In this document: positions 2,780 to 55,344 of the stretch, one piece after another
Position numbering within the stretch: the stretch's first letter is position 1
Layout: every line of letters starts with the position of its first letter
IMG/VR virus record: IMGVR_UViG_3300036766_000194
Coordinates: 186,001 to 250,000 of that record
DNA length: 64,000 nt
Direction: 5' to 3' (one strand)
Made by a program: the position numbers and the translations under genes
The notes under the pieces: model-generated
Seen by the model: the letters and a program-made list of their open reading frames with translations, nothing else
The model's database searches: none
Told to the model about the DNA's origin: nothing

Positions 2780-3073
2780 TCACGGTTCGCTGGCAACTGC
2801 ATCCACCTTATTTCTCGCAATCTTAGACCTTACATGATGTTGATGTTTCCTGGAATTGGTTTTTTGCTTCTTCTTGGGCATGGGCGCACCCTCTGTATCA
2901 AGATCATTAAATACAGCGGTATGCTTGGCGATGTTCAAACCTTTTTCTGGTTTAATATTATTGGCGATGTCTTCCATGTCTTGCCTGGACTTACCGTACT
3001 CAATATGGAAGCGAATTCCATTGTCAGTAAATTTGGTTGTAATCAGGCTATTCGCTCCCCCAGGGGGCAGCAA
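2780..3073 (-). CDS. Possible hypothetical protein or gene remnant
   Basis: TTG start, no clear SD; in frame with the upstream DUF932 gene. Confidence 0.3.
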   Translation of the reverse strand: MLPPGGANSLITTKFTDNGIRFHIEYGKSRQDMEDIANNIKPEKGLNIAKHTAVFNDLDTEGAPMPKKKQKTNSRKHQHHVRSKIARNKVDAVASEP

Positions 3074-3124
3074 TCGCCCTCTTGGCCGCCAACCAGAACA
3101 CTCCCGTGAGTACGAAGAATAACT

Positions 3125-3853
3125 TCATGCTGCCTGAACCACCAAACCGAATTCACGACCGATTTGCTGGGTAGAAATAAGACGAGTGGTGAGAGGCATA
3201 GACTTCATAGCTTCGGTGAAGGCGTTATGGAGAGACCAGGCATTGCGAGGCTGGAACTCCAGGTGACGCGGCTCAAAGTACTCGTGGCTAACGTCATTGA
3301 AAAGCCTTACGGGAAGAATCTTTTTGACGAAGATATCGTGAATCATCGCCTTGGCTTCCAGGTCACCCAATTCGCGAGCCTGAAGATTATTTACTTCGAT
3401 CTTGAGATTGGCATAGTGCTCTTCAAACTTCGCAACGGCCAGGTTGAGTTCCTGAACCAGATTCAGTCCGGAAGTGTGACGACGATCCATGGCAACGAAA
3501 TCACCATTAAGAGCCAGATTGTCGCAAACGAAGACGCGGAGACCAGCGACGATTTGTAGAGCCATAGAGCGGTCGTTCGCTTGACGGAAACCCATTGCGG
3601 CGCAGGTATCGGGAACACCGTTGAGGGAGAGATCGAAAGTTCCAAAGAGGCGGGAACCGTCAGCGCGAATGGCATACTGCTCGCGCTCGATGGTGATGTT
3701 GCGCTTGCTCAGTGCCAATTCCATCGTCTCGACAAGCTCGATATGCGGAACGGGCTTGAAAGTTTCGGTGGCAACAGGCATGGGAATGTTGCGAAGTTGA
3801 TCGCGGGAAACCAGGGTGGTATCTTTGTGGGCGGAAAGGACTGCTTGACTCAT
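3125..3853 (-). CDS. DUF932/DUF945-family phage/plasmid protein
   Basis: P.ATETFKPVPHIELV and ANDRSMALQIVAGLRVFVCDNLAL motifs; strong SD (CAGGAGGA). Confidence 0.85.
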   Translation of the reverse strand: MSQAVLSAHKDTTLVSRDQLRNIPMPVATETFKPVPHIELVETMELALSKRNITIEREQYAIRADGSRLFGTFDLSLNGVPDTCAAMGFRQANDRSMALQIVAGLRVFVCDNLALNGDFVAMDRRHTSGLNLVQELNLAVAKFEEHYANLKIEVNNLQARELGDLEAKAMIHDIFVKKILPVRLFNDVSHEYFEPRHLEFQPRNAWSLHNAFTEAMKSMPLTTRLISTQQIGREFGLVVQAA

Positions 3854-3872
3854 CGGTAAATCCTCCTGGGTC

Positions 3873-16259: not shown

Positions 16260-16523
16260 ATGCCAACCGGATGCAAATGTGGTGAAAATAAAACTGCTGA
16301 TGTTGGAACTCTTTGGTATGTAGAAGGAAGAAACGCTTATTCAGCCGACGCTTCAGATCTTCAACACTCTGGAGAACGAGGAAAGAAATGCCCTGGATGT
16401 AACGGACCCATGCCACCAGTACGGCTGAACTTTCTTCCAAGATCTCAAGGGGGAGAAAACATAACCCACTGGATAGGTCGATGTCTTAACTGTAAAGCCA
16501 ATATAACTATTTGGAATGACTAA
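16260..16523 (+). CDS. Zn-ribbon protein; copy of the C-terminal domain of 55090..56055
   Basis: Identical to the C-terminus of 55090..56055 from GCKCGENKTA onward; own SD (GGAGG) and promoter-like CAGTAGAGTATAAT. Confidence 0.75.
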   Translation: MPTGCKCGENKTADVGTLWYVEGRNAYSADASDLQHSGERGKKCPGCNGPMPPVRLNFLPRSQGGENITHWIGRCLNCKANITIWND

Positions 16524-16525
16524 AA
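16269..16525 (+). repeat. 257-bp inverted repeat, copy A (partner 55088..55344)
   Basis: Compared base by base with the reverse complement of 55088..55344; no mismatch found. Confidence 0.95.
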
Positions 16526-43115: not shown

Positions 43116-43508
43116 GCTTGAGTGCCTTTTCTTTATGTAATTTCTTCCAATCGGTATGATCCCAAACACACCCGTTAGTACAATACTGTTTTATTTTGGG
43201 CTTATAATTTGTACAACCAGGATAGGCGCAAATAATTTTCTTACAACCATCTACATCAAGATGTTCGGCATCCTAGTGACTGTTTTACCCCACTTATTAC
43301 AACGATACACAGTCCACTCGTCCGAAGCACCTCTATTGCCAAGAAATACCCAATGATGTAACATTTAGAACGCAGCCTTTTTGATATTCTCAGGACGAAA
43401 ATAATCATGGACGTAGAATACCGTGCCACCCCCATTCACGCCATCAAAAAAACTTCTGCTCAAAACTCACTTGACACTGAGGCAATATTTGATATATTTT
43501 TTCTTCCA

Positions 43509-44279
43509 TTAAAACGCAGCCTTCTGTTGAGAATTTTGAATCCTTTCCCATTGCTTCGGCCACCCAGTCTTATACCATACCCCGATAATGGCCTCAGCAT
43601 CTTCAGTGTTCAAAAAAGCATTACCAAATTCGCTGTTGTAGGAAGTTTTCTCATTCAGACTCCGCCATCCGATTATGAGACGTAGCAACCCATCTTCTCG
43701 TTTTACGGTTCCAACCAGAGGGTCAACTCCATGTTTGCAACTAGCGTTATCAAAGATCAGCAGATCTCCCGCTTGAGCGGCTACAACTTCTTCCGTTCCA
43801 TCAGGTAGATAAATACGAGTTCCACCACCATCGGTGTCGTTGACAAGAGTGAGTACCGCGACTTTATCGGGACGGATGCTACGCTTAATATCTAGGTTCC
43901 CGTTATCAATAGAAAAATCTAGCAATTCTCCATCATGATGTTTAGGAACAACTTCAGAAGAAGAGAAGTACTCCTGAACATTGAAAAGTATTCTTGCTTT
44001 AAGAGACAATCCGAGTTCTCCCAAGGCGCGTCGGTGAAGGTCTACTAGATTTTCCAATCTTACATTGAAGAGGTCAATGAAAGGAAGTTCCCCATTATAG
44101 TAGAGAGAAGTCGCATAGGCATGGGAAGTTCTATTGGGATGGGTATCGCTTAGATAAGCCGCATGACAGGCTAAGTTTTCTTGAGTATAGAAAGTCTTCT
44201 TAAAAGAGAACGTCTCCTTAATAATGTTCTCAATCTGATTTTGTGGTACGAAGTTCTTGATAAGATGGTAGTAGTTCAC
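43509..44279 (-). CDS. 2OG-Fe(II) oxygenase
   Basis: HHD...GGGT...GDLLIFDN...HGV...R triad pattern. Confidence 0.8.
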   Translation of the reverse strand: MNYYHLIKNFVPQNQIENIIKETFSFKKTFYTQENLACHAAYLSDTHPNRTSHAYATSLYYNGELPFIDLFNVRLENLVDLHRRALGELGLSLKARILFNVQEYFSSSEVVPKHHDGELLDFSIDNGNLDIKRSIRPDKVAVLTLVNDTDGGGTRIYLPDGTEEVVAAQAGDLLIFDNASCKHGVDPLVGTVKREDGLLRLIIGWRSLNEKTSYNSEFGNAFLNTEDAEAIIGVWYKTGWPKQWERIQNSQQKAAF

Positions 44280-44408
44280 TGTGCCCCCAAGGGGTTAATA
44301 CTGTAGAAGCAGGGATTGAGCAAGCTGTTAAAACTCCTCTTCTCGCAATATTAAATATCGAGGAGAGATGTCTCAATGAATAAGCTATTGAGTTATTTCA
44401 AAGTTATT

Positions 44409-44708
44409 CTACTTTAACTTCACCCTATCCGTATTACACAGCACCTGAAGCTCACACCCATAATGTCGCTTCTCAGCGCCACGAATAACAGGATGGTCGT
44501 AATAACAAATACCACACTTTTCACAAATGCGGTCTCCTCCCGCTCGATAATAGCGGAAGGCTTTATTCCAAGTGTTCTCATCTCCAGCTAGGTTATCACG
44601 CTCAACATCTAAGAGGTGGGAATTATTACAGAAAAAATTCAACTCCGCTCGTCTAACGTTGTGGTTATGATGGTGGTAGAAATTCTGACCTGGGTAATAT
44701 TCAGGCAC
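44409..44708 (-). CDS. Cys/His-rich hypothetical protein
   Basis: ICEKCG...HP...VLCN. Confidence 0.65.
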   Translation of the reverse strand: MPEYYPGQNFYHHHNHNVRRAELNFFCNNSHLLDVERDNLAGDENTWNKAFRYYRAGGDRICEKCGICYYDHPVIRGAEKRHYGCELQVLCNTDRVKLK

Positions 44709-45015
44709 AGGGATTCCCTTCTAACTCCATTTTAAACTTTTCATAATTGGTGCGAATTTCGTTGAAAGATTTTTCCACTCTCTTGAAATGACAACAACGA
44801 CAAATCTTCTCCGTCATACCATGAACATAAGCTAACGTAGATTCAGAAAAATTTACTGTCGCTTTATGAATTTCGCAGTCAACACAAAGGTCAGCCGCGA
44901 AGACTGCGCTACACTTAGGACAGCTAGGAACACGCCAAGCGTCGGTAGGCAAGTCAGCCTCAAACTCCCCATGCTTAAAACAAAACCATTTTTCACCTTG
45001 TCCGTATACGCTCAT
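44701..45015 (-). CDS. Cys-rich hypothetical protein
   Basis: Multiple CxxC motifs; AAGGAG SD. Confidence 0.65.
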   Translation of the reverse strand: MSVYGQGEKWFCFKHGEFEADLPTDAWRVPSCPKCSAVFAADLCVDCEIHKATVNFSESTLAYVHGMTEKICRCCHFKRVEKSFNEIRTNYEKFKMELEGNPCA

Positions 45016-45223
45016 ACAATCTCCTTACGGTAATTCTTCATCATCAGGAATGTTAAGTATTTTCCTAAGCAAAATTTCTTCTGGTGAAAGATGACCCTTA
45101 CCCTTATTGGGTTTAACTGATTTTCTTCCTTCATGCTTATCACACAATACGTCGTGCTGGTCGTTACAATGGGTAACTTTTCGTTCACAAAAGGAACAAT
45201 TCAAACCTTCTTTAATTTCAATC

Positions 45224-45952
45224 TCACAACCCCGGCAGATCGTATATTCCCGCCGCAGACGCAGCCTTTATCCACCACTTTCCCTCAGGACTCTCCCAAC
45301 TAGGAAGAGAACAATCGTGAGGATAAAACTCCATTTCTCTCCCAGTAAACAAAACCCTAAAATCATTAGCTATGATCTCTCCCGGAGAAGAATGCCATTT
45401 ACCTCCGGTGTATTTCTTGGAATAATCTTCTATCCCTCGGAGCTTCATGTATTCTTCTTTTAATTTTTCTTGATGAGTATCCGGGTACCCCATTTTACGA
45501 GCAACATAATCAAATACCGCATGACCGTACTCGTGGGGAACCAGGTAGCGCGTCATAGCAGGCATGATAGGAATACGCTTCGCGGCCAAAATTATGGAAA
45601 GGGCTTGACCGTAGGACCTTATTACCTTCCCATCATAGCGATTGATTTCTTCGTCCCACTCAGATCCGTCTTCCTTGTTATAGACAGAGTCTTCAAAAGT
45701 ACACCCATTTATTCTATCAACAAAGTCATGAGACAAAATCCATATGCCAACTCTAGCATCTTTTAAGGGGAATACTTTTTCGCATTGTGTGGCTAGACTG
45801 TTGACGAGTCCTATGTCGTGGGCATAAGCAGGATAAGGATCGACCTTATTATTACGAGGATATGTACCCGCTCCGCATTGATATACGGGCGTGGTTTCTT
45901 GACTTCCTAGCGGCCAATGAAGATCTTCAGGGGTTAGTAGAGTAACTTGCAT
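45224..45952 (-). CDS. Putative zinc metallopeptidase
   Basis: HEYGH motif with downstream EIIANDF. Confidence 0.65.
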   Translation of the reverse strand: MQVTLLTPEDLHWPLGSQETTPVYQCGAGTYPRNNKVDPYPAYAHDIGLVNSLATQCEKVFPLKDARVGIWILSHDFVDRINGCTFEDSVYNKEDGSEWDEEINRYDGKVIRSYGQALSIILAAKRIPIMPAMTRYLVPHEYGHAVFDYVARKMGYPDTHQEKLKEEYMKLRGIEDYSKKYTGGKWHSSPGEIIANDFRVLFTGREMEFYPHDCSLPSWESPEGKWWIKAASAAGIYDLPGL

Positions 45953-45972
45953 GAGTTACTAATACTGGAAAT

Positions 45973-46046
45973 TGGAGCACGGTGAGGGAATCGAACCCTC
46001 CTAGACGGTTTTGCAGACCGCCGCCTTCCCAATCGGCATACCGTGC
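45973..46046 (-). tRNA. tRNA-Cys(GCA)
   Basis: Cloverleaf; anticodon loop CT-GCA-AA; GGTTCGATTCC; encoded CCA. Confidence 0.95.
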
Positions 46047-46286
46047 TTAAAAATCGTTAACCGTTATCGGTTTTTGTATCCGAGTCTTACCGTTAATTCG
46101 GTCTGCCCAGAACTGTAAATTCTTTTCAAAATCTTTCCCTTTTTGAGGAAATATGTCCCAAAAAGCCATGTACGGATTATGGATGTCTTTTTCAAATCGG
46201 TCTTTCCCACAGAGCACGACCGCCGTGATCTTGTTAATGACCACGCCGCGCTCCCTTGCTTTCCGTATTCCGCCATCAAAGCTCAT
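46047..46286 (-). CDS. Hypothetical protein
   Basis: ATG overlaps the TGA of the upstream iscU-fragment ORF. Confidence 0.65.
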   Translation of the reverse strand: MSFDGGIRKARERGVVINKITAVVLCGKDRFEKDIHNPYMAFWDIFPQKGKDFEKNLQFWADRINGKTRIQKPITVNDF

Positions 46287-46453
46287 TTTATGCAAATCCC
46301 TCTGTTTTCTTCTAAAACGTAGAAATCAATATCGTCCGTCTTAGCCCAACGCCCTGCGTATCCGGTCATCTGCAACTTCATGACGTCGCCGCATTCCGGC
46401 GCACCCACCAGTCCCGTACCCACGTTGGGATCACTCTTGTCGAGTGAACCCAT
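46283..46453 (-). CDS. iscU: 56-aa chimeric ORF: IscU fragment (28 aa) fused to unrelated sequence
   Basis: MGSLDKSDPNVGTGLVGAPECGDVMKLQ then MTGYAGRWAKTDDIDFYVLEENRGICIK; hand-translated, below the ORF-track cutoff. Confidence 0.8.
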   Translation of the reverse strand: MGSLDKSDPNVGTGLVGAPECGDVMKLQMTGYAGRWAKTDDIDFYVLEENRGICIK

Positions 46454-46481
46454 ATCTCTATTCTACTGGAAGACAAGTATC

Positions 46482-46555
46482 TGGAGCTATCGGATGGAAT
46501 CGAACCATCACTTCGACTTTACCAAAGTCGAGAACTGCCACTATTCTACGATAGC
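46482..46555 (-). tRNA. tRNA-Thr(GGT)
   Basis: Cloverleaf; loop TT-GGT-AA; CCA. Confidence 0.93.
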
Positions 46556-46601
46556 ATTTTCAGGTATTTCTCCACTTTTTCTGCATTTGGATCCATAAAA
46601 C

Positions 46602-46675
46602 TGGAGCCTAGTGTCAGAATCGAACTGACATCCCCTGATTACGAAACAGGGATTCTGCCATTGAACCAACTAGGC
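46602..46675 (-). tRNA. tRNA-Thr(CGT)
   Basis: Cloverleaf; loop TT-CGT-AA; CCA. Confidence 0.9.
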
Positions 46676-46744
46676 AAATACCCCGAACGGTAATGTTTCT
46701 GAGAAATATCCTTTGAATCTCAAAAATATTACCGCCCGGTAACT

Positions 46745-46822
46745 TGGAGCTAACGGTGAGATTCGAACTCACGGGTTGCCTGTTTACAAGACAGGTGCGA
46801 TGGGCCACTCCGCCACGTTAGC
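46745..46822 (-). tRNA. tRNA-Thr(TGT)
   Basis: Cloverleaf; loop CT-TGT-AA; CCA. Confidence 0.93.
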
Positions 46823-46825
46823 AAA

Positions 46826-46900
46826 TGGTTCCCAGAACACGACTCGAACGTGTACAGCAAGTTCCAAAGACTTGCGTCCTACCGATTAGACGATCTGGGA
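46826..46900 (-). tRNA. tRNA-Gln(TTG)
   Basis: Cloverleaf, U1-A72; loop CT-TTG-GA; CCA. Confidence 0.93.
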
Positions 46901-47035
46901 GTAGAAAAACAAGCAGCGACTTCAAGATATTACGATTCAGTTGTGAGAGAAAAAGCCGCCGCGAACCGCTTACAGAGTGTAAGTTCGTTGGTACGTTCGT
47001 GTTCGGCGACAAGTGTTCATGGTGTTCTGTATATA

Positions 47036-47332
47036 TTATACCGTAGTTCTCTGAAAAAAGTTAATTAGCGATTTTCTTCTCTTTGCGCACTCCAGAGACC
47101 AACGCGGCGTCATAAAGAGGCCGCGAATCCAATCTTCCATCTCCTCATCCATAAAACTTCTCAATGGTACGATTTCTGAATGACCAATACCAAAGGTCAT
47201 GGCATGGGATTCAATTTCTTCTAAATAGCAACATTGGGCGGGGTTACGAGGGGCAATTGGTTTTTTATATTTCTCAGGAACAGGATGAGAAGACTTTGGC
47301 GGTCTATTTTTGATAAGAACCTCGCTACTCAT
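47036..47332 (-). CDS. Hypothetical protein
   Basis: ORF track. Confidence 0.55.
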   Translation of the reverse strand: MSSEVLIKNRPPKSSHPVPEKYKKPIAPRNPAQCCYLEEIESHAMTFGIGHSEIVPLRSFMDEEMEDWIRGLFMTPRWSLECAKRRKSLINFFQRTTV

Positions 47333-47347
47333 TTAAGGTTCTGGTAG

Positions 47348-48010
47348 CTACTCTTCTAAATCTAAGGTAGAATACTCCAGAGAGGCTGCGTGCGCAGCAG
47401 GCTCCCCAGCTAAAGCATTTGCTGCAGACTGTAAATCATTACGTCCTAGGACAAAACCGTGACGAAATAGCTCCCAAATGAACCCATTATTAGCGATAAA
47501 AAGTTCGTTGGGATGTTGGGGAGAAGAATAAGTTTCATACGGGATGTGAAAATTGTCAGTGGGCTTAGGAAACCGGACAATCATTGTCAATGCCCAACGT
47601 TTTGTATCGTCCCTTAGTATACTGACCCCGGAAGTTTCTTTAGTAATTTTATACCCGGTGGCGACTTCATAATCGGATTGAAATTTAGGATACTGCTTAG
47701 GAGGCATACTGGCGGATATAGAACATCCGTTATGGAGTAGGTAGTTTTCAAACTCACCACTAGGAAGAATGGTGACTTTCTTGTGACCTGGCCCCTTTTT
47801 CTTTTCTGGTAGAGGTTTTACCGCATGGTTGGAAGGTTGTAAAAATTGTTCCTTGAGTTTTTTGTCACCAAATTCAGACTTATCAAAACGAACGGTTACG
47901 ATGTCGCCATCTTGGGATACAACGGTTCCGGTACCAAATGCTGTACTAATAACGCCTTGTCCTGGTAGGTAGTCCATGTTAAGGGATGGAAAAGTAGATA
48001 TATATGGCAA
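47348..48010 (-). CDS. Protein with an N-terminal PcrA/UvrD-type Tudor-like domain (start possibly ATG 47977)
   Basis: GQGVISTAFGTGTVVSQDGDIVTVRFDKSEFGDKKL. Confidence 0.65.
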   Translation of the reverse strand: MPYISTFPSLNMDYLPGQGVISTAFGTGTVVSQDGDIVTVRFDKSEFGDKKLKEQFLQPSNHAVKPLPEKKKGPGHKKVTILPSGEFENYLLHNGCSISASMPPKQYPKFQSDYEVATGYKITKETSGVSILRDDTKRWALTMIVRFPKPTDNFHIPYETYSSPQHPNELFIANNGFIWELFRHGFVLGRNDLQSAANALAGEPAAHAASLEYSTLDLEE

Positions 48011-48062
48011 AGATTATTGAATTTCCCACACCCAAGTGTCAAAAATGCGATAGACCCATACA

Positions 48063-48290
48063 TTATGGACTGGAGGGAGATCCTTGTTCATTGTGTGAGG
48101 AATGCTGCGTGTTAGATATGTTGGAAATTGTGAAAAAATCTAAACAAATTTTGTAACGAATAGAATTTCGTAATTTTAGAGTTTTGCGAACGTGACAATT
48201 AGCACAATGCACATCACATAGAGCTATCTCTTCCAATAAGCTTTTTCGGCTTCCCAAGGTTAAAGAAGTTACATGTTGTTTTATCTAAAA
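48063..48290 (-). pseudogene. HNH-type endonuclease C-terminal remnant
   Basis: LLEEIALCDVHCANCHVRKT with no intact N-terminus. Confidence 0.55.
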
Positions 48291-48292
48291 CA

Positions 48293-48322
48293 AAAAGGTC
48301 CTAGATTTCTCTAGGACCTTTT
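48293..48322 (-). terminator. Terminator downstream of the tmRNA gene
   Basis: Perfect 12-bp stem AAAAGGTCCTAG/CTAGGACCTTTT plus T run. Confidence 0.9.
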
Positions 48323-48340
48323 CGTAGCCGTTATTTTATA

Positions 48341-48694
48341 GAGTGGACAAACTCCAGGCTGATGTTAAGCCGCCGCTGCCATCGCAAAGGTGGCTGTTGG
48401 CTGCATAGCAGCGAACGGCAGAACCTTGGATGTCATACGGGCAACAGTGTTTTTGACACTTATTGTCTGCGACCCGAATATCGTTCGGATTGCACCTACG
48501 GCGCGTAAGCAATTTCGATTCAGTCGGATCGGCGACTCCAGATCAGGCCCATAGAAAAACTTGGTGGACCTGCGGGGATTCGAACCCCGGTACGAAACGA
48601 CAACCAAAACGCCTTCTTCCCTTACGGGTATTTACGAGCGTCAATGTCTCAGCAACCAGACCGGGTAACGAACTTCTGTCCGGCACCAGTCGCT
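48341..48694 (-). ncRNA. ssrA: Two-piece (circularly permuted) tmRNA gene
   Basis: Minus strand order: T arm CGGGG-TTCGAAT-CCCCG, CAGGTCC-A-CCA (CCA end at 48562), 11-nt spacer, then GGGCCTGATCTGGAGTCG (starts 48550). The acceptor stem has G3-U70 and A73. A frame ending ...TFAMAAAA-TAA follows. Outer limits approximate. Confidence 0.9.
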
Positions 48695-48749
48695 GTCTAT
48701 ATATTACTTGAAAAGTTAAGAAAAGCTAGTGTCTTTCGCTTTTCTATTT

Positions 48750-48974
48750 CTATCGCCCAATCTTTTCTATTTTTGTTAGAAAAATAGAATTTAGAGCTTC
48801 ATTAACTGCCTTCATCTGTTCAATTCCCTGTTGGCAAGCATCTAGGCTCTCTTTACTTATGTTGAAGATGCCGAGGCTGCCATTGTCAAGTTCCATTTCT
48901 TGAATGATGGCTTTGGCAATTTCACGGGGATTAGGTGAAACGTTTAATTCCGTTGTCCGCAACAAACTGGGCAT
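48750..48974 (-). CDS. Hypothetical protein
   Basis: ORF track; overlaps the upstream gene end. Confidence 0.5.
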   Translation of the reverse strand: MPSLLRTTELNVSPNPREIAKAIIQEMELDNGSLGIFNISKESLDACQQGIEQMKAVNEALNSIFLTKIEKIGR

Positions 48975-49911
48975 GATCAGCGGGAGGGAGTTCCCACGGG
49001 AGCGTCTTTACTCCCGGATAATAATAATTATCTGTTGGTCCATACATATCCAGAGTATAAGCGCCCCGTTGATTAAGAAGTTCCTTACCGATTTCGGTCA
49101 ACAGCCAGGGAGAGTTCACTCCGTCTTTCTTTTCAATGACACCCTCACGACGCATGTGGGTAAGAAGAGAAGAATCGTGTAAGGAGGGAAAATACGCCTT
49201 GAGTTCTTTGCTTATACAACCATCCGGGCGCGTGGCAATGGCTTGGAGAATTCCGTGACCTTGACTGCCAGCACGATACAACTTGGAAACGGTCCTGTTA
49301 CGGGGTGTAGAAAATTCCTGAGTCGTGTGGTCCAGCTTTTTGAAGAAATTCATATTTTGGACATCGTCCATGTCATTATAACTTGTAAACTGGTGGCGGA
49401 TATTCTCAAGCTCGGAGTGAGTATCGGAGAAGTTGGCATAACCATTAGCGAAGCTACCCCCGATCATGTTGAGTTTATTGGAAATGGAATTCTTGTCCTT
49501 AACCCTGTTCAACTGAAGAACTTCTTTTCCCAGTTGTGTCAGCTGCATACCCAAGTCATATCTGCGCTTTTGTTCCAGAGTTTGGATATTCGGCATTGCG
49601 CGTTTCCTCCGTTTGTATTCTACTGGATTAGACGCTAAACGGCTATTTCCCATATGCTCTATAGGTTTAGCCTGACCACTTACATAGATTTTAAGTGATT
49701 CTGAATCGGATCCTTCGGCTAAAATTCTACGCAAGTTACTAAGGAATTGCCAACTTCCGTCAGGATACACAAACATCTTACCTGTATCTCCCTGCTTACG
49801 CCACATAGAAAATTCATCAGGGCTTGCTATTCTATCCCATCCGTGTTCCATCAACAGGATATCAGCATCCCTGTCCATAGCTCCTTTGTGTAAAAACCAA
49901 GCCTTAGCCAT
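48931..49911 (-). CDS. Mosaic protein starting with leader MAKAWFLHKGA
   Basis: Three modules separated by RLAS, KRA and YRA motifs; last module winged-HTH-like. Confidence 0.8.
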   Translation of the reverse strand: MAKAWFLHKGAMDRDADILLMEHGWDRIASPDEFSMWRKQGDTGKMFVYPDGSWQFLSNLRRILAEGSDSESLKIYVSGQAKPIEHMGNSRLASNPVEYKRRKRAMPNIQTLEQKRRYDLGMQLTQLGKEVLQLNRVKDKNSISNKLNMIGGSFANGYANFSDTHSELENIRHQFTSYNDMDDVQNMNFFKKLDHTTQEFSTPRNRTVSKLYRAGSQGHGILQAIATRPDGCISKELKAYFPSLHDSSLLTHMRREGVIEKKDGVNSPWLLTEIGKELLNQRGAYTLDMYGPTDNYYYPGVKTLPWELPPADHAQFVADNGIKRFT

Positions 49912-49958
49912 TATTGACCTCTATAGTGGAGTGGAAATTAACTCAACTGAGGAAGAAT
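49862..49958. repeat. 97-bp direct repeat, copy 1 (promoter motif + SD + first 17 codons)
   Basis: Identical to 50491..50587 (offset 629). Confidence 0.95.
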
Positions 49959-49973
49959 GATTTGTAGTCCAAC

Positions 49974-50237
49974 TTACGAAATCCCGTTTCTAGAATTTCG
50001 TAATCCCAAGTAACTAATAATATCACCATTCACCAAGCTCCGTGTATAAGGAGCAAGTTGAACTTCGTTCTGACCGTATTCCCAAACCAAATGGAGAATT
50101 CGAGAGTCAAACTCATCATGATCACGACTCTGAATCCCACGAAGAAGTTCGACATCCTTATCTGGAATTTCGACTATGCGAAAGTAGTTCAAACTATCCC
50201 CTTGATACATTCCTCGAAGTTCAACTGGAATTCTCAT
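49974..50237 (-). CDS. Hypothetical protein
   Basis: AAGGAG SD. Confidence 0.7.
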   Translation of the reverse strand: MRIPVELRGMYQGDSLNYFRIVEIPDKDVELLRGIQSRDHDEFDSRILHLVWEYGQNEVQLAPYTRSLVNGDIISYLGLRNSRNGIS

Positions 50238-50248
50238 TCAAAGTCTCC

Positions 50249-50374
50249 TTGATAAGGAGTCGCAGCACGTTCATCAAGAATTCGTCGGTACGCCAAATTC
50301 CAATCAGTATGCTTGATAAGGCCTCGCAGCATTTTCATCAAGAATTCGTCGGTACGCCAAATTCCAATCAGTAT
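50249..50374. repeat. Tandem duplication with 64-bp period (41-bp perfect core)
   Basis: 50270..50310 = 50334..50374. Confidence 0.95.
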
Positions 50375-50540
50375 ACTGACCAAGTTCCTCGAAAGTAGTG
50401 ACGGAACCGTCATCACCGACCCAACGAGTCGGCATACGACCAACAGAAGCAGCAACATATCCGTCGTTGCGACGCCAGACATAATAAACGTCAGCATCCC
50501 TGTCCATAGCTCCTTTGTGTAAAAACCAAGCCTTAGCCAT
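50304..50540 (-). CDS. 78-aa protein with the same MAKAWFLHKGAMDRDAD leader
   Basis: Starts inside repeat copy 2; its stop is created by the 64-bp duplication. Confidence 0.7.
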   Translation of the reverse strand: MAKAWFLHKGAMDRDADVYYVWRRNDGYVAASVGRMPTRWVGDDGSVTTFEELGQYTDWNLAYRRILDENAARPYQAY

Positions 50541-50587
50541 TATTGACCTCTATAGTGGAGTGGAAATTAACTCAACTGAGGAAGAAT
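50491..50587. repeat. 97-bp direct repeat, copy 2
   Basis: Identical to 49862..49958. Confidence 0.95.
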
Positions 50588-50604
50588 TAAGTACTTATAC
50601 AATT

Positions 50605-51618
50605 ATGCAGATTCCTATTCCTCCTTCTGGAGTTATACCTAACCACATTTTTGAAACCTATTGGAATTTTGCCAGTGAGCGTCAACGTGTGTTTTGGAAA
50701 CGCAAGAATGGTGAACCAGGTCCTTGGAGTGAAGATCCTATTCTGCAAACCTATAAATTTACCAATACTTACCGGGTACTGGATAGAGTCAGCCAGTACC
50801 TATTGAGGAATATCATCGTCTATCCGGAGTGTAGCGATTTGGATTGTACAGTCCACTCTTCTCCTGAGAACACAATCTTCCGTATTATGTTCTTTAAGCT
50901 ATTCAATCGTCCAGAAACTTGGGAAATGCTCAGCAGTGAATTAGGCGAAGAACCCCATATAGATAATTTTAACTTTACCATCTACGATGAAACTCTTACA
51001 TCTGCTCAAGATCGTGGAGAGAAAATTTATTCCAACGCATACATGATGACAGCTGCGGGTAGTAACGGGGATCGTCGTCACCGGATGTATTTGCGATTGT
51101 ATGAAAAGATGTTTCATGAGGATAAAATCCAGGACAAGATTTTAGAAGCCACTTCACTAGAGGCTCTCTACAATCTTATCCGTACATATCGGACCATGGG
51201 ACCATTCCTCGCGATGCAGTACGCAATTGACCTCAATTATTCTCCGTTCGTAAATTTCTTAGAGACAGACTTCATCATAGCCGGACCGGGAGCTAGAAGA
51301 GGAATCCTAAAATGTTTTGATAGCATAGGAAACCACAATGAAGCTGATGTTATAAGATGGGTTCAAGAAACTCAAGATGAACAATTTATGTCGCGAGGGT
51401 TAGAATTTAAAAAGATAGGAAATCGTCCTCTACAGTTAATTGATTGCCAGTCGTTATTTTGTGAGGTGGATAAATTTACAAGAGCAAGTAACCCTGAAAT
51501 CCAGGTTGAGACAGGATCCGGGGATGCTCAAAAACGAGCAAGGATTAAACAGAACTTCAAGGAAAACAGTAATAAGATTGAGTATGTGTTTCCCTCCAAA
51601 TGGGGAGTTAAGATATGA
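50605..51618 (+). CDS. aGPT-Pplase1 family (alpha-glutamyl/putrescinyl thymine pyrophosphorylase clade 1; amino acid:DNA transferase-like)
   Basis: YWNFASERQRVF...GPWSEDPILQTYKFTNTYRVLDRVSQYL, FKLFNRPETW, GPFLAMQYAIDLNY, AGPGARRG, IDCQSLFCEVDK; start moved to ATG 50605. Confidence 0.85.
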   Translation: MQIPIPPSGVIPNHIFETYWNFASERQRVFWKRKNGEPGPWSEDPILQTYKFTNTYRVLDRVSQYLLRNIIVYPECSDLDCTVHSSPENTIFRIMFFKLFNRPETWEMLSSELGEEPHIDNFNFTIYDETLTSAQDRGEKIYSNAYMMTAAGSNGDRRHRMYLRLYEKMFHEDKIQDKILEATSLEALYNLIRTYRTMGPFLAMQYAIDLNYSPFVNFLETDFIIAGPGARRGILKCFDSIGNHNEADVIRWVQETQDEQFMSRGLEFKKIGNRPLQLIDCQSLFCEVDKFTRASNPEIQVETGSGDAQKRARIKQNFKENSNKIEYVFPSKWGVKI

Positions 51619-51811
51619 TGACTTTTCTAGCCAGAGTATCTAGAGGACTTGTAGTTATCTTGAACCTTTATAGTGACTTTTATAGTGTTATTAGGGTTGA
51701 CGGTTTGGACTCTTCTAACAAAGCATCCCTACGGATTCTGGATTATTCTAGGAAGTACGGGAGGGTGTTATCTAATGGGTTGGGCTGACGAACGCCTAGA
51801 ATGGTTATGAA

Positions 51812-52183
51812 ATGATAGACCACAAAAAAGACTGGATTGGCGTGGACTTTGACGGTACACTAGCTTTCTATGACAAATGGCACGGTCCCACCCATCTGGG
51901 AGAGCCTCTACCCGAAATGGTGAGTCGGGTGAAGCAGTGGATAGCGGAAGATAAGAATGTTCGTATATTTACTGCTCGTTGTTATTCTCCTATTGATGAT
52001 GCCATTGCTCAACGAGAAGCAGCAATGGCCTTACTTGCTATGCAAGAATGGTGTCTAAAGCATCTTGGTGCTGTACTTCCTATCACTTGTGTTAAGGATT
52101 ATGGTATGACCGAATTTTGGGATGATCGTGCCGTACAGATGGAAAAGAATACCGGAAAACCTATAAAATCGCGAGGTGAGTGA
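51812..52183 (+). CDS. HAD-superfamily phosphatase-like protein
   Basis: IGVDFDGTLA, IFTAR, WDDRA. Confidence 0.8.
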   Translation: MIDHKKDWIGVDFDGTLAFYDKWHGPTHLGEPLPEMVSRVKQWIAEDKNVRIFTARCYSPIDDAIAQREAAMALLAMQEWCLKHLGAVLPITCVKDYGMTEFWDDRAVQMEKNTGKPIKSRGE

Positions 52184-52815
52184 GAATGTATCCCCAACGT
52201 ATTATAATAAATTTGAGGTCTACAAATGGAGGCGGCAAAACTTTTGCCGTCAAAAGTCTAATAAAGTATATGCAGGGAATTCCTATGTTCAGGGATGGGA
52301 AGATCTGGGCATATAACCTACAAAATCGTGTCTTCGTTTTGGGTCGTTATGAAACTCCAACCGGAGGATGTGATGGTATACGGACTCAAGAAGAAATCTA
52401 CGCAGGTATTCGTGAATTAGCAAAGCTAGGTAGCGTAGTATTTGAAGGTGTTCTTATATCCTGTATGTATGGGAAATATCGGGAGCTAGAAGATGAACTC
52501 AAGCCCACCCATAACTGGATCTGGGCTTGTCTTGACACGCCGTTAGAAAAGTGTATTGAACAGACTCTAAAACGTCGGGCGGAGAAAGGTAATACAAAAC
52601 CATTTGACCCAGAAAAGAGTCTTACAGGTAAATTCAGAGGAGTCATCACAACGCGAGCAACCTTAGAGAAGGAAGGTAGAGATGTCCGTACCCTTAACCA
52701 CCAGTTCACTCTGGCGAGTCTCTTAGACTGGCTAGGAGAACGTCCTCTAATTTACAGGTCTGTAGAACGCAGAGAAGCTGTTAGTCCCATTGATATTATG
52801 GGAGAGGTAAAATGA
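52180..52815 (+). CDS. P-loop nucleotide kinase of the type associated with base-modification clusters
   Basis: INLRSTNGGGKT, LGRYETPTGGCDGI, VVFEGVL, LDTPLEKCI. Confidence 0.75.
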   Translation: MRMYPQRIIINLRSTNGGGKTFAVKSLIKYMQGIPMFRDGKIWAYNLQNRVFVLGRYETPTGGCDGIRTQEEIYAGIRELAKLGSVVFEGVLISCMYGKYRELEDELKPTHNWIWACLDTPLEKCIEQTLKRRAEKGNTKPFDPEKSLTGKFRGVITTRATLEKEGRDVRTLNHQFTLASLLDWLGERPLIYRSVERREAVSPIDIMGEVK

Positions 52816-52930
52816 GAGTGATTAAGGAAACATTCGACACTAAATAGCTGCTTATGGCGTTAGACGACATATTGCTCTTCTTCCAACGTTTTCAAAGTCT
52901 TTACAGAAATCTTCCTATAAAGTCCCGACA

Positions 52931-53512
52931 TTACTGCACCAACTCGGGATGACGATACCCCGCCACCGTGAGAACCTTGGTAGCATAATCATCCCCGCTA
53001 ATAGTTCCGTCGTCAGTTCCCATTCCCAGATAGTGATGAAGTCCACCGCGCAATCCGTGAAGTCTTTTGTAAGAAGATAGAATCTTCGTTCCTTCTTCAA
53101 TTCCGCGTTCAGGGTCCATAAGATCTTCACAAGGGATGTTCCAAACTCTACTGTTAACCTGCATGTATCCGCAAGAATAACGCTTAGAAGACGCCTGAGA
53201 ATGACAACTTGACTCCACAAAAATGAGAGCAGACAATACTCTTGCCGGGATGTTGTGATCAACGGCCTTACGAGCCGTAATATAGATCAGATCCTCGTCT
53301 TCACAGCCATTAGCCGCATAAATATGACGAGAAACATCTTCAGCCATATGATATTTCTTCTGAAGTTTTTCCTGAGAAATTTGATTGATTATATCCTCAG
53401 GGGAGAAAGCCTTAACACGGAGGGGTTGGGGAACTTGAAACTCAGCGGTGATAAAGGACCCTGCTGTAGCTGAGAAAACTATAATTGAAGTTACAATAAC
53501 CAATATTCTCAT
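52931..53512 (-). CDS. Lytic transglycosylase (SLT) with N-terminal signal/TM segment
   Basis: ALIFVESS...GYMQV...LMDPERGIEEGTKIL. Confidence 0.85.
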   Translation of the reverse strand: MRILVIVTSIIVFSATAGSFITAEFQVPQPLRVKAFSPEDIINQISQEKLQKKYHMAEDVSRHIYAANGCEDEDLIYITARKAVDHNIPARVLSALIFVESSCHSQASSKRYSCGYMQVNSRVWNIPCEDLMDPERGIEEGTKILSSYKRLHGLRGGLHHYLGMGTDDGTISGDDYATKVLTVAGYRHPELVQ

Positions 53513-53574
53513 ACAGGTATTCTACTGTAGAAAGCAGACTTCGGTTAGTTTGTAAACCTATGTAGATACTGTAG

Positions 53575-53814
53575 TTACTTGCTTAATTCAGCCTTCAAAG
53601 CATCGTGACTCTGGCCCTTATTAACTTTTCCATCAATAATGTGTTTCCAATTATCTCCCGGTCCAGTCCATACTTCTTCATTTCCTCTAGTGTAGTGATC
53701 CCATCCAGAAGGTTCAGCATGTTGGAATTCAAAACCTAAAGGAGTGAGCAACGCCATATCTTCATCACGATCGCGAGCATCAGCCCAACGGAATAAACGG
53801 GAAGTAAGTCTCAT
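53575..53814 (-). CDS. Small protein with leader MRLTSRLFRWA
   Basis: Start moved to ATG 53814 (AGAGG SD, promoter motif). Confidence 0.7.
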   Translation of the reverse strand: MRLTSRLFRWADARDRDEDMALLTPLGFEFQHAEPSGWDHYTRGNEEVWTGPGDNWKHIIDGKVNKGQSHDALKAELSK

Positions 53815-53972
53815 GGGTGCCTCTATAATGAAAGCGAAAAATTGGTGCCTGCAATAACGAATTTTCGAACGAATAGAGTATTCATAGATAGACGGACGCT
53901 CTGTTCGGCGCAACCCGTCAAATCACAAAAACCAAAAATATTCTTTTTGTTTTTCAGTCATAGTCTCACCTT

Positions 53973-54046
53973 TGGAACGCCCGACGAGACTTGTACCCGC
54001 AACCTTCCCTTTTGAAGAGGGCTGCTCTACATTGAGCTACGGGCGT
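53973..54046 (-). tRNA. tRNA with UCA anticodon (opal suppressor or Trp-like; atypical)
   Basis: 7-bp acceptor ACGCCCG/CGGGCGT, U73, CCA; loop CT-TCA-AA; short variable arm; T loop TACAAGT and a D loop with a single G are non-canonical. Confidence 0.7.
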
Positions 54047-54053
54047 GTAGTTT

Positions 54054-54265
54054 TACCAAGATTCATATTCCGTTACGTCTAAACTATCGTTACACTTGTT
54101 ACAGCGGACTACAGTGTTTGGTCCAATTCCACTTGCCCCGCTCTGCGCTACAGTAATATTCTCTCCCTCACAATCAAACTGGTGGGTAAGAGGGATAAAT
54201 GGTCACGTTACCACTTCATGAGATCTGAACTTATAAAGATAGCAGGTTGGTTACAGGAACACCAT
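54054..54265 (-). pseudogene. Decayed small phage gene (...GIGPNTVVRCNKCNDSLDVTEYESW)
   Basis: Coupled ATG at 54265, but in-frame TAA (codon 5) and TGA (codon 21). Confidence 0.5.
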
Positions 54266-54408
54266 TACGAGAGAAATAGGATCAATTCGTATGAGCATTC
54301 CAGCAAAAGTAAATTGATAGATGCTTGTTTAAGAATTTCGTTAACAGCAAGTTGTAAATCAAGAGGTAACGGCGTTAATTGCCGTAACTCATCATCCAGA
54401 GATGACAT
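54265..54408 (-). CDS. 47-aa hypothetical protein
   Basis: AAGGAGAG SD; hand-translated. Confidence 0.45.
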   Translation of the reverse strand: MSSLDDELRQLTPLPLDLQLAVNEILKQASINLLLLECSYELILFLS

Positions 54409-55087: not shown

Positions 55088-55344
55088 TTTTAGTCATTCC
55101 AAATAGTTATATTGGCTTTACAGTTAAGACATCGACCTATCCAGTGGGTTATGTTTTCTCCCCCTTGAGATCTTGGAAGAAAGTTCAGCCGTACTGGTGG
55201 CATGGGTCCGTTACATCCAGGGCATTTCTTTCCTCGTTCTCCAGAGTGTTGAAGATCTGAAGCGTCGGCTGAATAAGCGTTTCTTCCTTCTACATACCAA
55301 AGAGTTCCAACATCAGCAGTTTTATTTTCACCACATTTGCATCC
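55088..55344 (-). repeat. 257-bp inverted repeat, copy B (partner 16269..16525)
   Basis: Exact reverse complement of 16269..16525. Confidence 0.95.

What the first reader, a model, noticed from the sequence alone, without database searches (positions are those of the whole stretch)
48341..48694. Phage-borne circularly permuted (two-piece) tmRNA
Seen: the T arm and CCA end come before the GGGCCUG 5' strand, separated by 11 nt. The acceptor stem pairs 7/7 with G3-U70 and A73 (Ala identity). A tag frame, a class-1 promoter motif (48697-48717) and a strong terminator complete a ~350-nt gene. Known: two-piece ssrA occurs in alphaproteobacteria, one cyanobacterial clade, some betaproteobacteria and jakobid mitochondria; the phage ssrA genes I know are one-piece. 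Inference: an independent permutation or an unusual transfer. No smpB is in the window, so it would use host SmpB.
Basis: partly seen in the sequence, partly recalled or inferred. Interest (0 to 1): 0.85.

Follow-up and report, generated by a model that had tools for sequence, protein, structure and literature searches.

The report
Divergent two-piece tmRNA in jumbo phage
A 300-kb uncultured phage carries a real circularly permuted (two-piece) ribosome-rescue RNA gene; such genes are already known in phages, and this one stands out only for being very divergent and encoding an unusually long 30-residue tag.

Summary
On the minus strand at about 48286-48700 there is a permuted ssrA gene. It has a T arm, then the 3' acceptor strand plus ACCA, an 11-nt linker, then the GGGCCUG 5' strand. 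The acceptor stem pairs 7/7 with G3-U70 and A73. A tag frame and a very strong terminator follow. ARAGORN and Rfam RF04321 both call it (51.6 bits, cut-off 47).

The window is part of a 299,875-bp myovirus contig related to the Acidobacteriota jumbo phage Tunturi_5.

Two-piece tmRNAs in phages were reported in 2022, when 53 of 133 unique phage tmRNAs were called two-piece. I also found about 40 more IMG/VR contigs carrying them, mostly beta-type.

This copy is the outlier of that set:
- It reaches no alpha, beta or cyano subtype threshold.
- It is only 41-50% identical to any other viral permuted tmRNA.
- It resumes at GUC (Val), as two other viral copies do.
- It encodes a 30-aa tag ending AAAA. 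This probably arose when a stop codon in the P5 loop was lost.

The promoter motif, P2, PK1 and an independent permutation are not demonstrated. No smpB was detected in the window.

Verdict: a real, probably functional, divergent variant of a known kind, of moderate to low interest.

The parts
48286..48700 (-). Whole precursor gene (approximate): 5' leader, acceptor piece, linker, coding piece, terminator
   Evidence: ARAGORN 48274-48654; RF04321 48365-48626; folds. The 5' end is not mapped.
48697..48717 (-).
   Evidence: No sigma-70 match. The 21-mer is unique in the window. The TAATATATA core also lies ahead of the tRNA cluster at 47038, but two occurrences is about what chance gives.
48650..48695 (-). 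5' leader hairpin of 15 bp, an extension absent from other viral permuted tmRNAs
   Evidence: Fold -21.3 kcal/mol, z = -2.4. It is a window-specific extra segment in alignment A1.
48593..48626 (-). Acceptor-piece strand of helix P2 (CGUAA ... GGCG ... CGU.UCG)
   Evidence: RF04321 alignment: 12 pairs with 3 mismatches. In the RNAalifold consensus of 15 viral copies, P2a forms 4 of 6 pairs in the window. Not better than shuffles.
48573..48589 (-). T arm (5 bp, loop UUCGAAU)
   Evidence: Pairs with compensatory changes across 15 viral copies.
48562..48572 (-). 3' acceptor strand CAGGUCC, discriminator A73, encoded CCA (3' end of the acceptor piece)
   Evidence: Sequence
48551..48561 (-). 11-nt intervening segment, predicted to be removed in processing; U at position -1 of the predicted RNase P site
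   Evidence: Sequence. Other viral copies have linkers of 4-34 nt.
48544..48550 (-). 5' acceptor strand GGGCCUG (5' end of the coding piece)
   Evidence: 7/7 pairing with G3-U70
48532..48543 (-). D-loop analogue AUCUGGAGUCGC. It keeps the invariant GA..UGG..UCG positions but has C where all 7 aligned relatives have A.
   Evidence: Alignment A1 invariant columns; RF04321 alignment
48504..48531 (-). Coding-piece strand of P2 (CGA.CCG ... CGAA ... UUACG)
   Evidence: UUACG can pair instead with the local CGUAG to form a hairpin.
48469..48510 (-). Two adjacent hairpins (48510-48494 and 48493-48469) where PK1 is expected. No pseudoknot established.
   Evidence: Fold -16.0 kcal/mol, z = -1.4
48365..48457 (-). 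Tag reading frame: resume codon GUC 48457-48455, 30 codons (VKNTVARMTSKVLPFAAMQPTATFAMAAAA), stop UAA 48367-48365
   Evidence: ARAGORN. The resume context AUAAGU|GUC AA aligns with the GUC resume codons of L037 and L051.
48369..48419 (-). P5-like 18-bp helix. Its 5' strand encodes ...LPFAAM, its loop has no stop codon, and its 3' strand encodes FAMAAAA.
   Evidence: Fold -28.3 kcal/mol, z = -2.6
48286..48325 (-). Intrinsic terminator (16-bp stem followed by a U tract)
   Evidence: Fold -24.4 kcal/mol, z = -8.0. The weak Rfam BjrC68 hit is only this hairpin.

Best explanation
This is a genuine permuted ssrA gene of a ~300-kb myovirus.

Proposed mechanism (inferred, not tested):
1. The gene is transcribed as one precursor.
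2. Host RNase P cuts 5' of G48550. The 11-nt linker is trimmed back to the encoded CCA at 48562.
3. This yields an acceptor piece and a coding piece held together by the 7-bp acceptor stem and a weak P2 helix.
4. Host AlaRS charges the RNA through G3-U70 and A73. Host SmpB and EF-Tu deliver it to ribosomes stalled on broken mRNAs.
5. Translation resumes at GUC and adds Ala plus a 30-residue tag ending AAAA. The ribosome then stops at UAA, is released, and the tagged protein goes to proteases.

For the phage, this would keep ribosome rescue running in a host whose mRNAs are being destroyed.

The gene sits in an ~11-kb accessory island with tRNA genes, which the closest sequenced relative lacks.

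The long tag most likely arose when the stop codon in the P5 loop was lost. Reading then continues through the 3' strand of P5. That strand is complementary to Ala codons, so it again encodes an Ala-rich end.
For: Shown:
- All tRNA-like-domain elements are in permuted order.
- RF04321 scores above its cut-off.
- The unconstrained fold recovers the T arm and acceptor stem.
- The same helices carry compensatory changes across 15 viral permuted tmRNAs aligned with it.
- The resume codon and its context match two other viral copies.
- A P5-like helix encloses the tag end.
- The terminator is very strong, z = -8.
- No tRNA is called at this site, and no second T arm or CCACCA follows the tag, so this is not a tRNA followed by a standard tmRNA.
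- An identical copy occurs in a second sample (L033).
- The phage context is clear.

From the literature:
- Two-piece tmRNA is functional in Caulobacter (Keiler 2000, as cited in PMC9004378).
- tmRNA and SmpB genes occur in huge phages (PMC7162821).

Inferred: processing, charging, tagging and the benefit to the phage.
Against: - The Rfam score is only 4.6 bits above the cut-off and comes almost entirely from the tRNA-like domain.
- P2 has 3 mismatches in 12 pairs and is no better than shuffles.
- No PK1 could be defined.
- One otherwise invariant A of the D-loop analogue is C.
- The tag is three times the usual 10 aa (PMC11915505) and starts with Val.
- Its Ala-rich end could be a by-product of helix complementarity rather than of selection.
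- No promoter is established.
- No diverged homologue exists to test covariation in the non-tRNA parts.
- The two closest genomes, Tunturi_5 and LR745208.1, have no tmRNA.
Confidence: 0.6

Rival explanations
1. The gene is a decaying or repurposed ssrA. The tRNA-like domain is intact, but the mRNA-like part no longer supports normal tagging. The RNA then acts mainly by binding SmpB, AlaRS or EF-Tu. That would damp host trans-translation, or release ribosomes without a working degradation signal.
For: P2 is weak and PK1 is undefined. The stop codon is apparently lost, giving a 30-aa tag. It has the lowest RF04321 score of all viral copies examined. A TLD-only phage molecule (DS6A) is known, and a similar molecule inhibits tmRNA (PMC4131195; PMC11915505).
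Against: The resume-codon context is conserved with L037 and L051. The frame still ends in AAAA followed by UAA just after P5. The coding piece is kept with its own strong terminator.
Confidence: 0.2
2. This is a fourth, independent permutation event. The gene was rearranged within a phage lineage from a one-piece ssrA, such as those of the capsid-related phage G and cluster C mycobacteriophages. It was not inherited from the alpha, beta or cyano lineages.
For: It reaches no subtype threshold: beta 38 bits against 84, alpha 6 bits at an unrelated spot, no cyano hit. It is 41-50% identical to every viral permuted copy, with no nearest neighbour. Similarity scores to E. coli one-piece tmRNA are in the same range as to permuted copies. 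Capsid relatives carry one-piece ssrA.
Against: Similarity to phage G tmRNA is the lowest in the comparison. Beta-model scores fall in a continuum among viral copies. It shares the GUC resume codon with sub-threshold beta-like copies L037 and L051. It shares the short linker and the acceptor-stem sequence with beta-type L036. The nearest genomes have no ssrA at all.
Confidence: 0.12
3. It is a false 'permuted' call. Either a tRNA-Ala or attachment-site fragment happens to lie next to the 5' part of a standard tmRNA, or the region is really an 80-codon protein gene (48607-48365).
For: RF04321 does give a 53-bit false permuted hit where tRNA-Ala directly precedes a standard tmRNA (L024, L030). 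The tag frame is open for 80 codons.
Against: Neither ARAGORN nor Rfam finds a tRNA here. No second T arm or CCACCA lies downstream. The two acceptor strands match 7/7. No Pfam family matches either overlapping ORF. The frame runs straight through the T arm and acceptor stem.
Confidence: 0.03

Closest known systems
Beta-type permuted tmRNA (Rfam RF01850), as carried by many IMG/VR viral contigs (e.g. L049, L072, L036)
   Same: Permuted gene order, short intervening segment, tRNA-like domain and P2a. It has the same acceptor stem sequence as L036. beta_tmRNA is the best-scoring clan model.
   Different: Only the tRNA-like domain aligns, at 38 bits against a cut-off of 84. It has an extra 5' hairpin and an insert in the acceptor piece. 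It uses a Val resume codon. Its tag is 30 aa instead of the AND...LAA tags of 10-21 aa.
Sub-threshold beta-like viral copies L037 (111-kb contig) and L051 (266-kb contig)
   Same: GUC resume codon with a matching upstream context. The tags open the same way: VNDNVA in L051 and VNDND in L037, against VKNTVA here. None reaches a subtype cut-off.
   Different: Their tags are 12-13 aa and end in QAA or LAA. Overall identity is only 44-48%. The stored flanking genes are not shared with the window.
Two-piece ssrA of OM43 phage Melnitz and pelagimyophages (Buchholz et al. 2022, PMC9004378)
   Same: A permuted tmRNA in a lytic myovirus with no smpB reported. The same proposed roles apply.
   Different: Those copies are alpha-type, marine, and linked to a glutamine riboswitch. 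No riboswitch is detected here, and the habitat and host lineage differ.
One-piece ssrA of Bacillus phage G and cluster C mycobacteriophages
   Same: The phages belong to the same capsid clade (MCP 34% and 27% identity). In each case the tmRNA lies in a tRNA island.
   Different: Those genes have standard order and host-like tags (AKLNITNNELQVA in phage G). Phage G tmRNA has the lowest similarity to this RNA in the comparison.
Caulobacter crescentus two-piece tmRNA (Keiler, Shapiro and Williams 2000)
   Same: The working model: a single precursor, RNase P and 3' trimming, then two base-paired pieces that are charged and tag proteins (known from the literature, cited).
   Different: That is a cellular alpha-type gene with a canonical tag and experimental proof. 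Nothing here has been tested experimentally.

Membership tests
tmRNA, permuted form (Rfam RF04321) | Score at or above the curated gathering threshold | tested here: met
   51.6 bits against 47, full model 1-213. The margin is small.
tmRNA, permuted form (Rfam RF04321) | tRNA-like domain with a 7-bp acceptor stem, a T arm with a canonical loop, a D-loop analogue and no anticodon arm | tested here: met
   One conserved A of the D-loop analogue is C.
tmRNA, permuted form (Rfam RF04321) | Alanine identity set: G3-U70, A73, CCA | tested here: met
   G48548 opposite U48568, A48565, CCA 48564-48562
tmRNA, permuted form (Rfam RF04321) | Gene order: 3' half of the tRNA-like domain upstream of the 5' half, with no second 3' half downstream | tested here: met
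tmRNA, permuted form (Rfam RF04321) | Tag reading frame with a recognisable resume context and a hydrophobic or Ala-rich end before a stop codon | tested here: met
   GUC resume codon aligned with L037 and L051. The tag ends AMAAAA then UAA. Its length (30 aa) and Val start are atypical.
tmRNA, permuted form (Rfam RF04321) | Helix P2 joining the two pieces | tested here: inconclusive
   12 pairs with 3 mismatches. P2a forms 4 of 6 pairs. Not better than shuffles.
tmRNA, permuted form (Rfam RF04321) | Pseudoknot PK1 upstream of the resume codon | tested here: inconclusive
   Two hairpins are predicted instead, z = -1.4. No homologues are available for covariation.
tmRNA, permuted form (Rfam RF04321) | Processing into two RNAs, alanylation, SmpB binding and tagging | not testable with these tools
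   Needs RNA and protein experiments
beta_tmRNA (RF01850) | Full-length match at or above 84 bits, including the clade-specific helices | tested here: not met
   38 bits, model positions 80-163 only
alpha_tmRNA (RF01849) | Match at or above 50 bits | tested here: not met
   6.4 bits, at an unrelated position 48664-48728
cyano_tmRNA (RF01851) | Match at or above the gathering score | tested here: not met
   No hit listed even at E up to 10. It may have been hidden under the better beta hit of the same clan, so its score is at most 38 bits.
Phage-encoded trans-translation pair (tmRNA plus SmpB, as in some huge phages) | An smpB gene in the same genome | tested here: inconclusive
   None in the 64-kb window by tblastn with E. 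coli SmpB or in the ORFs scanned. The remaining ~236 kb was not available.

The most novel reading that the evidence does not exclude
This RNA founds a separate, phage-restricted lineage of two-piece tmRNA. In this reading it arose by its own permutation event, or diverged beyond recognition inside jumbo phages. Its elongated tag carries an internal LPFAA-like motif and a terminal AAAA. The tag gives tagged host proteins a fate different from that set by the host's own ssrA tag. It may work together with the opal-suppressor-like tRNA encoded 5 kb away, which would increase read-through to mRNA ends.
Probability: 0.1. Interest if true: 0.65.

Novelty: new variant of a known kind. Interest (0 to 1): 0.3.

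Why it matters
Phage-encoded tmRNAs show that large phages take over ribosome rescue as well as tRNA supply.

This copy extends the known range of two-piece tmRNAs in three ways:
- It is found in a non-marine jumbo phage related to an Acidobacteriota phage.
- Acidobacteriota genomes are recorded as carrying almost only standard tmRNA: 1589 standard against 5 permuted.
- Its sequence is far from all three recognised permuted clades.

It is also a concrete example of how a tmRNA tag can lengthen. Losing the stop codon in the P5 loop lets translation run into the complementary strand, which recreates an Ala-rich end. If the long tag works, it could help show what a degradation tag needs.

It also marks the sensitivity limit of current detectors. 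It passes RF04321 by less than 5 bits.

Tried and rejected
Searches for diverged homologues that found nothing new:
- Exact-pattern scans of viral contigs, genome contigs and metagenome contigs.
- They found only the source contig, a 99.6-99.9% identical strain (L033) and unrelated permuted tmRNAs.

Neighbour-gene route:
- The search for related loci with the 326-aa protein and the hmdU kinase returned only the source contig.
- The neighbours have no tblastn match in phages.
- The 220-aa neighbour has two 61%-identical homologues on ~1-kb contigs, too short to reach a tmRNA.

Relatives:
- All of Tunturi_5 (7 chunks) and LR745208.1 (10 chunks) were scanned. Both have many tRNAs and no tmRNA.
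- blastn of the gene against 50,697 phage records gave no match.

Other checks:
- Thermodynamic tests of P2 and of leader/tail pairing were not distinguishable from shuffles.
- Pairwise similarity to phage G, E. coli and viral permuted copies did not discriminate.
- Genome-wide stop-codon recoding was rejected. ORF lengths barely change, and TGA ends 11 of 51 long ORFs.
- A recurring promoter motif was not found.
- A paper search for the sample identifiers returned nothing.
- The alternative resume codon GCA at 48470-48468, which the RF04321 alignment places at the consensus resume codon, was rejected. It gives a 44-aa Cys-rich tag ending STL (my manual translation of the sequence). The homologous copies align the resume codon at GUC instead.

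Full report
**What is there**

Read on the minus strand, the region holds, in this order:
- a 5-bp T stem with loop UUCGAAU (48589-48573)
- the 3' acceptor strand CAGGUCC (48572-48566)
- A73 and an encoded CCA (48565-48562)
- an 11-nt spacer (48561-48551)
- the 5' acceptor strand GGGCCUG (48550-48544)
- the D-loop analogue AUCUGGAGUCGC

The two acceptor strands pair 7/7, with G-U at position 3:70. ARAGORN reports a permuted tmRNA at 48274-48654(-) with a 30-codon tag. Rfam's tmRNA_permuted model (RF04321) matches end to end at 51.6 bits, against a cut-off of 47. An unconstrained fold of the 415-nt precursor recovers the T arm and acceptor stem. The gene ends in a 16-bp terminator hairpin (z = -8.0).

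**False-positive routes checked**

RF04321 gave a 53-bit 'permuted' hit in two metagenome contigs where a tRNA-Ala is directly followed by a standard tmRNA (L024 and L030). That route does not apply here:
- No tRNA is called at the site.
- No second T arm or CCACCA follows the tag.
- The two acceptor halves are exactly complementary.

The two ORFs that overlap the locus, 80 and 82 codons long, match no Pfam family.

**Context**

The window matches positions of IMGVR_UViG_3300036766_000194, a 299,875-bp contig, at 100% identity. It encodes a major head protein, tail sheath, baseplate wedge, a terminase-like protein, NAMPT, a UvrD-type helicase and a 5-hmdU DNA kinase.

The closest isolate is the 309-kb Acidobacteriota myovirus Tunturi_5. 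Its major head protein is 70% identical, and 35 window ORFs have collinear hits at 25-70% identity. The tmRNA lies in an ~11-kb island (43.2-54.4 kb) with six tRNA genes. That island has almost no counterpart in Tunturi_5.

The genetic code is standard. A second sample holds a 99.6-99.9% identical strain with the same tmRNA (L033).

**What is already known**

Phage-borne two-piece tmRNAs are not new:
- Buchholz et al. 2022 (PMC9004378) described one in phage Melnitz. ARAGORN called 53 two-piece forms among 133 unique phage tmRNAs in 18,146 genomes, and 50 of the 53 came from marine or aquatic phages.
- Al-Shayeb et al. 2020 (PMC7162821) noted tmRNA and SmpB genes in huge phages.
- One degenerate pattern scan of IMG/VR returned 43 stretches. 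ARAGORN called permuted tmRNAs in nearly all of them.
- Of 19 loci run through Rfam (18 viral contigs and one metagenome contig), most are beta-type, with RF01850 at 87-185 bits and RF04321 at 77-163 bits.

**How this copy differs**

- It has the lowest RF04321 score of all copies seen.
- It reaches no subtype threshold: beta 38 bits on the tRNA-like domain only, alpha 6 bits at an unrelated spot, no cyano hit.
- It is 41-50% identical to each of 30 distinct viral permuted tmRNAs, with no nearest neighbour.
- It has an extra 15-bp 5' hairpin (48695-48650) and an insert in the acceptor piece.
- Its tag is 30 aa, against a modal 10 aa in the 97,179-sequence database (PMC11915505).

All permuted genes in that database are assigned to the alpha, beta or cyano clades. 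Acidobacteriota have 1589 standard and 5 permuted genes.

**The tag**

Alignment with other viral copies places the window's AUAAGU|GUC AAA AAC ACU GUU GCC against two others:
- L037: GUAAGU|GUC AAC GAU AAC
- L051: AUAUCU|GUC AAC GAC AAC GUU GCC

In most other copies the same position reads AUAAAU|GCA AAC GAU. This supports ARAGORN's GUC (Val) resume codon and shows that the tag opens in the family's usual way (VKNTVA against VNDNVA).

An 18-bp helix (48419-48369, z = -2.6) occupies the place of P5. Its 5' strand encodes ...KVLPFAA, which resembles the LPLAA and LPMAA endings of other viral tags. Its loop contains no stop codon. Its 3' strand is read as FAMAAAA, followed by UAA.

My inference is that a stop codon in the P5 loop was lost. 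Reading then continues into the strand complementary to the Ala codons, which recreates an Ala-rich end. The canonical-looking AAAA terminus is therefore weaker evidence of selection than it first appears.

**What remains weak**

- P2 as modelled by Rfam has 12 pairs with 3 mismatches. In the RNAalifold consensus of 15 viral copies, the window forms 4 of the 6 P2a pairs.
- Duplex energies are not better than shuffles.
- Two hairpins stand where PK1 should be, and no pseudoknot could be defined.
- The proposed promoter motif is unique in the window and is not sigma-70-like.
- No diverged homologue was found in three collections, so covariation cannot be tested outside the tRNA-like domain.

**Origin**

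Among viral copies, the beta model's score declines continuously: 185 down to 87, then 73 (L064), 52 (L051), 50 (L037), 44 (L026) and 38 here. The window shares its GUC resume codon with L037 and L051, and its acceptor-stem sequence with beta-type L036.

Phage G and cluster C mycobacteriophages belong to the same capsid clade and carry one-piece ssrA. However, phage G's tmRNA is the least similar in the comparison. The two nearest genomes, Tunturi_5 and LR745208.1, carry none.

The most economical reading is a strongly diverged member of a phage-associated beta-like group, acquired together with the tRNA island. An independent permutation cannot be excluded, and I rate it at about 0.1.

**Mechanism and verdict**

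By analogy with Caulobacter two-piece tmRNA, I expect one precursor, RNase P cleavage at G48550 and trimming to CCA. The two base-paired RNAs would be charged by host AlaRS and used with host SmpB, and would add a 30-residue tag. No smpB was detected in the window.

My confidence levels are:
- about 0.95 that this is a true permuted ssrA homologue
- about 0.6 that it works as a tagging tmRNA
- about 0.2 that it is a decaying or decoy-like derivative

This is a new variant of a known kind, and its interest is moderate to low.

Noticed in passing
window 53973-54046 (-): A 74-nt tRNA with anticodon UCA (ARAGORN labels it SeC), with U73 and an encoded CCA. It looks like an opal suppressor, although the genome uses TGA as a normal stop (11 of 51 long ORFs).
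   Followed up: partly
window 2782-3871 (-): A single in-frame TGA joins a 248-codon open frame (3871-3127) to a further 114 codons (3124-2782). This is a candidate read-through target for the UCA tRNA.
   Followed up: no
L098 6933-7369 (phage G); L032 3170-3244 and 6252-6562; L087 7629-7705: Suppressor-like tRNAs occur beside tmRNAs in other large phages. Phage G has tRNA(UUA) 54 nt upstream of its tmRNA. L032 has tRNA(CUA) 3 kb from a beta-type permuted tmRNA. LR745208.1 has tRNA(UUA) but no tmRNA.
   Followed up: no
window 43200-54400: An ~11-kb accessory island holds five clustered tRNAs (45973-46900), the tmRNA, a 5-hmdU DNA kinase (50515-51618) and the UCA tRNA. It interrupts otherwise collinear homology with Tunturi_5.
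   Followed up: partly
window 49862-49958 and 50491-50587; 50242-50374: An exact 97-bp direct repeat flanks ~530 bp between the tmRNA-adjacent 326-aa gene and the hmdU kinase gene. Between the two copies lie two overlapping 69-bp copies that are about 91% identical.
   Followed up: no
window 16269-16525 and 55088-55344: An exact 257-bp inverted repeat with arms 39 kb apart. It could be real or an assembly artefact.
   Followed up: no
window 49022-49412 versus L033: The near-identical strain from a second sample lacks ~390 bp inside the 326-aa ORF immediately upstream of the tmRNA gene.
   Followed up: no
L024 1029-1244; L030 2468-2683: RF04321 gives an above-threshold (53-bit) false 'permuted tmRNA' hit where a tRNA-Ala is directly followed by a standard tmRNA.
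   Followed up: yes
L084 11150-11459; L085 ~480-700: ARAGORN misses this permuted tmRNA, which has an unusual T loop (UUUCGAAUA) and the tag ADNDNFAPVALAA. Rfam finds it (RF04321 78 bits, alpha 65 bits).
   Followed up: partly
window 48365-48607 (-): The tag frame stays open for 80 codons back through the acceptor stem and T arm. This is probably chance in a G+C-rich structured RNA. No Pfam family matches it.
   Followed up: partly
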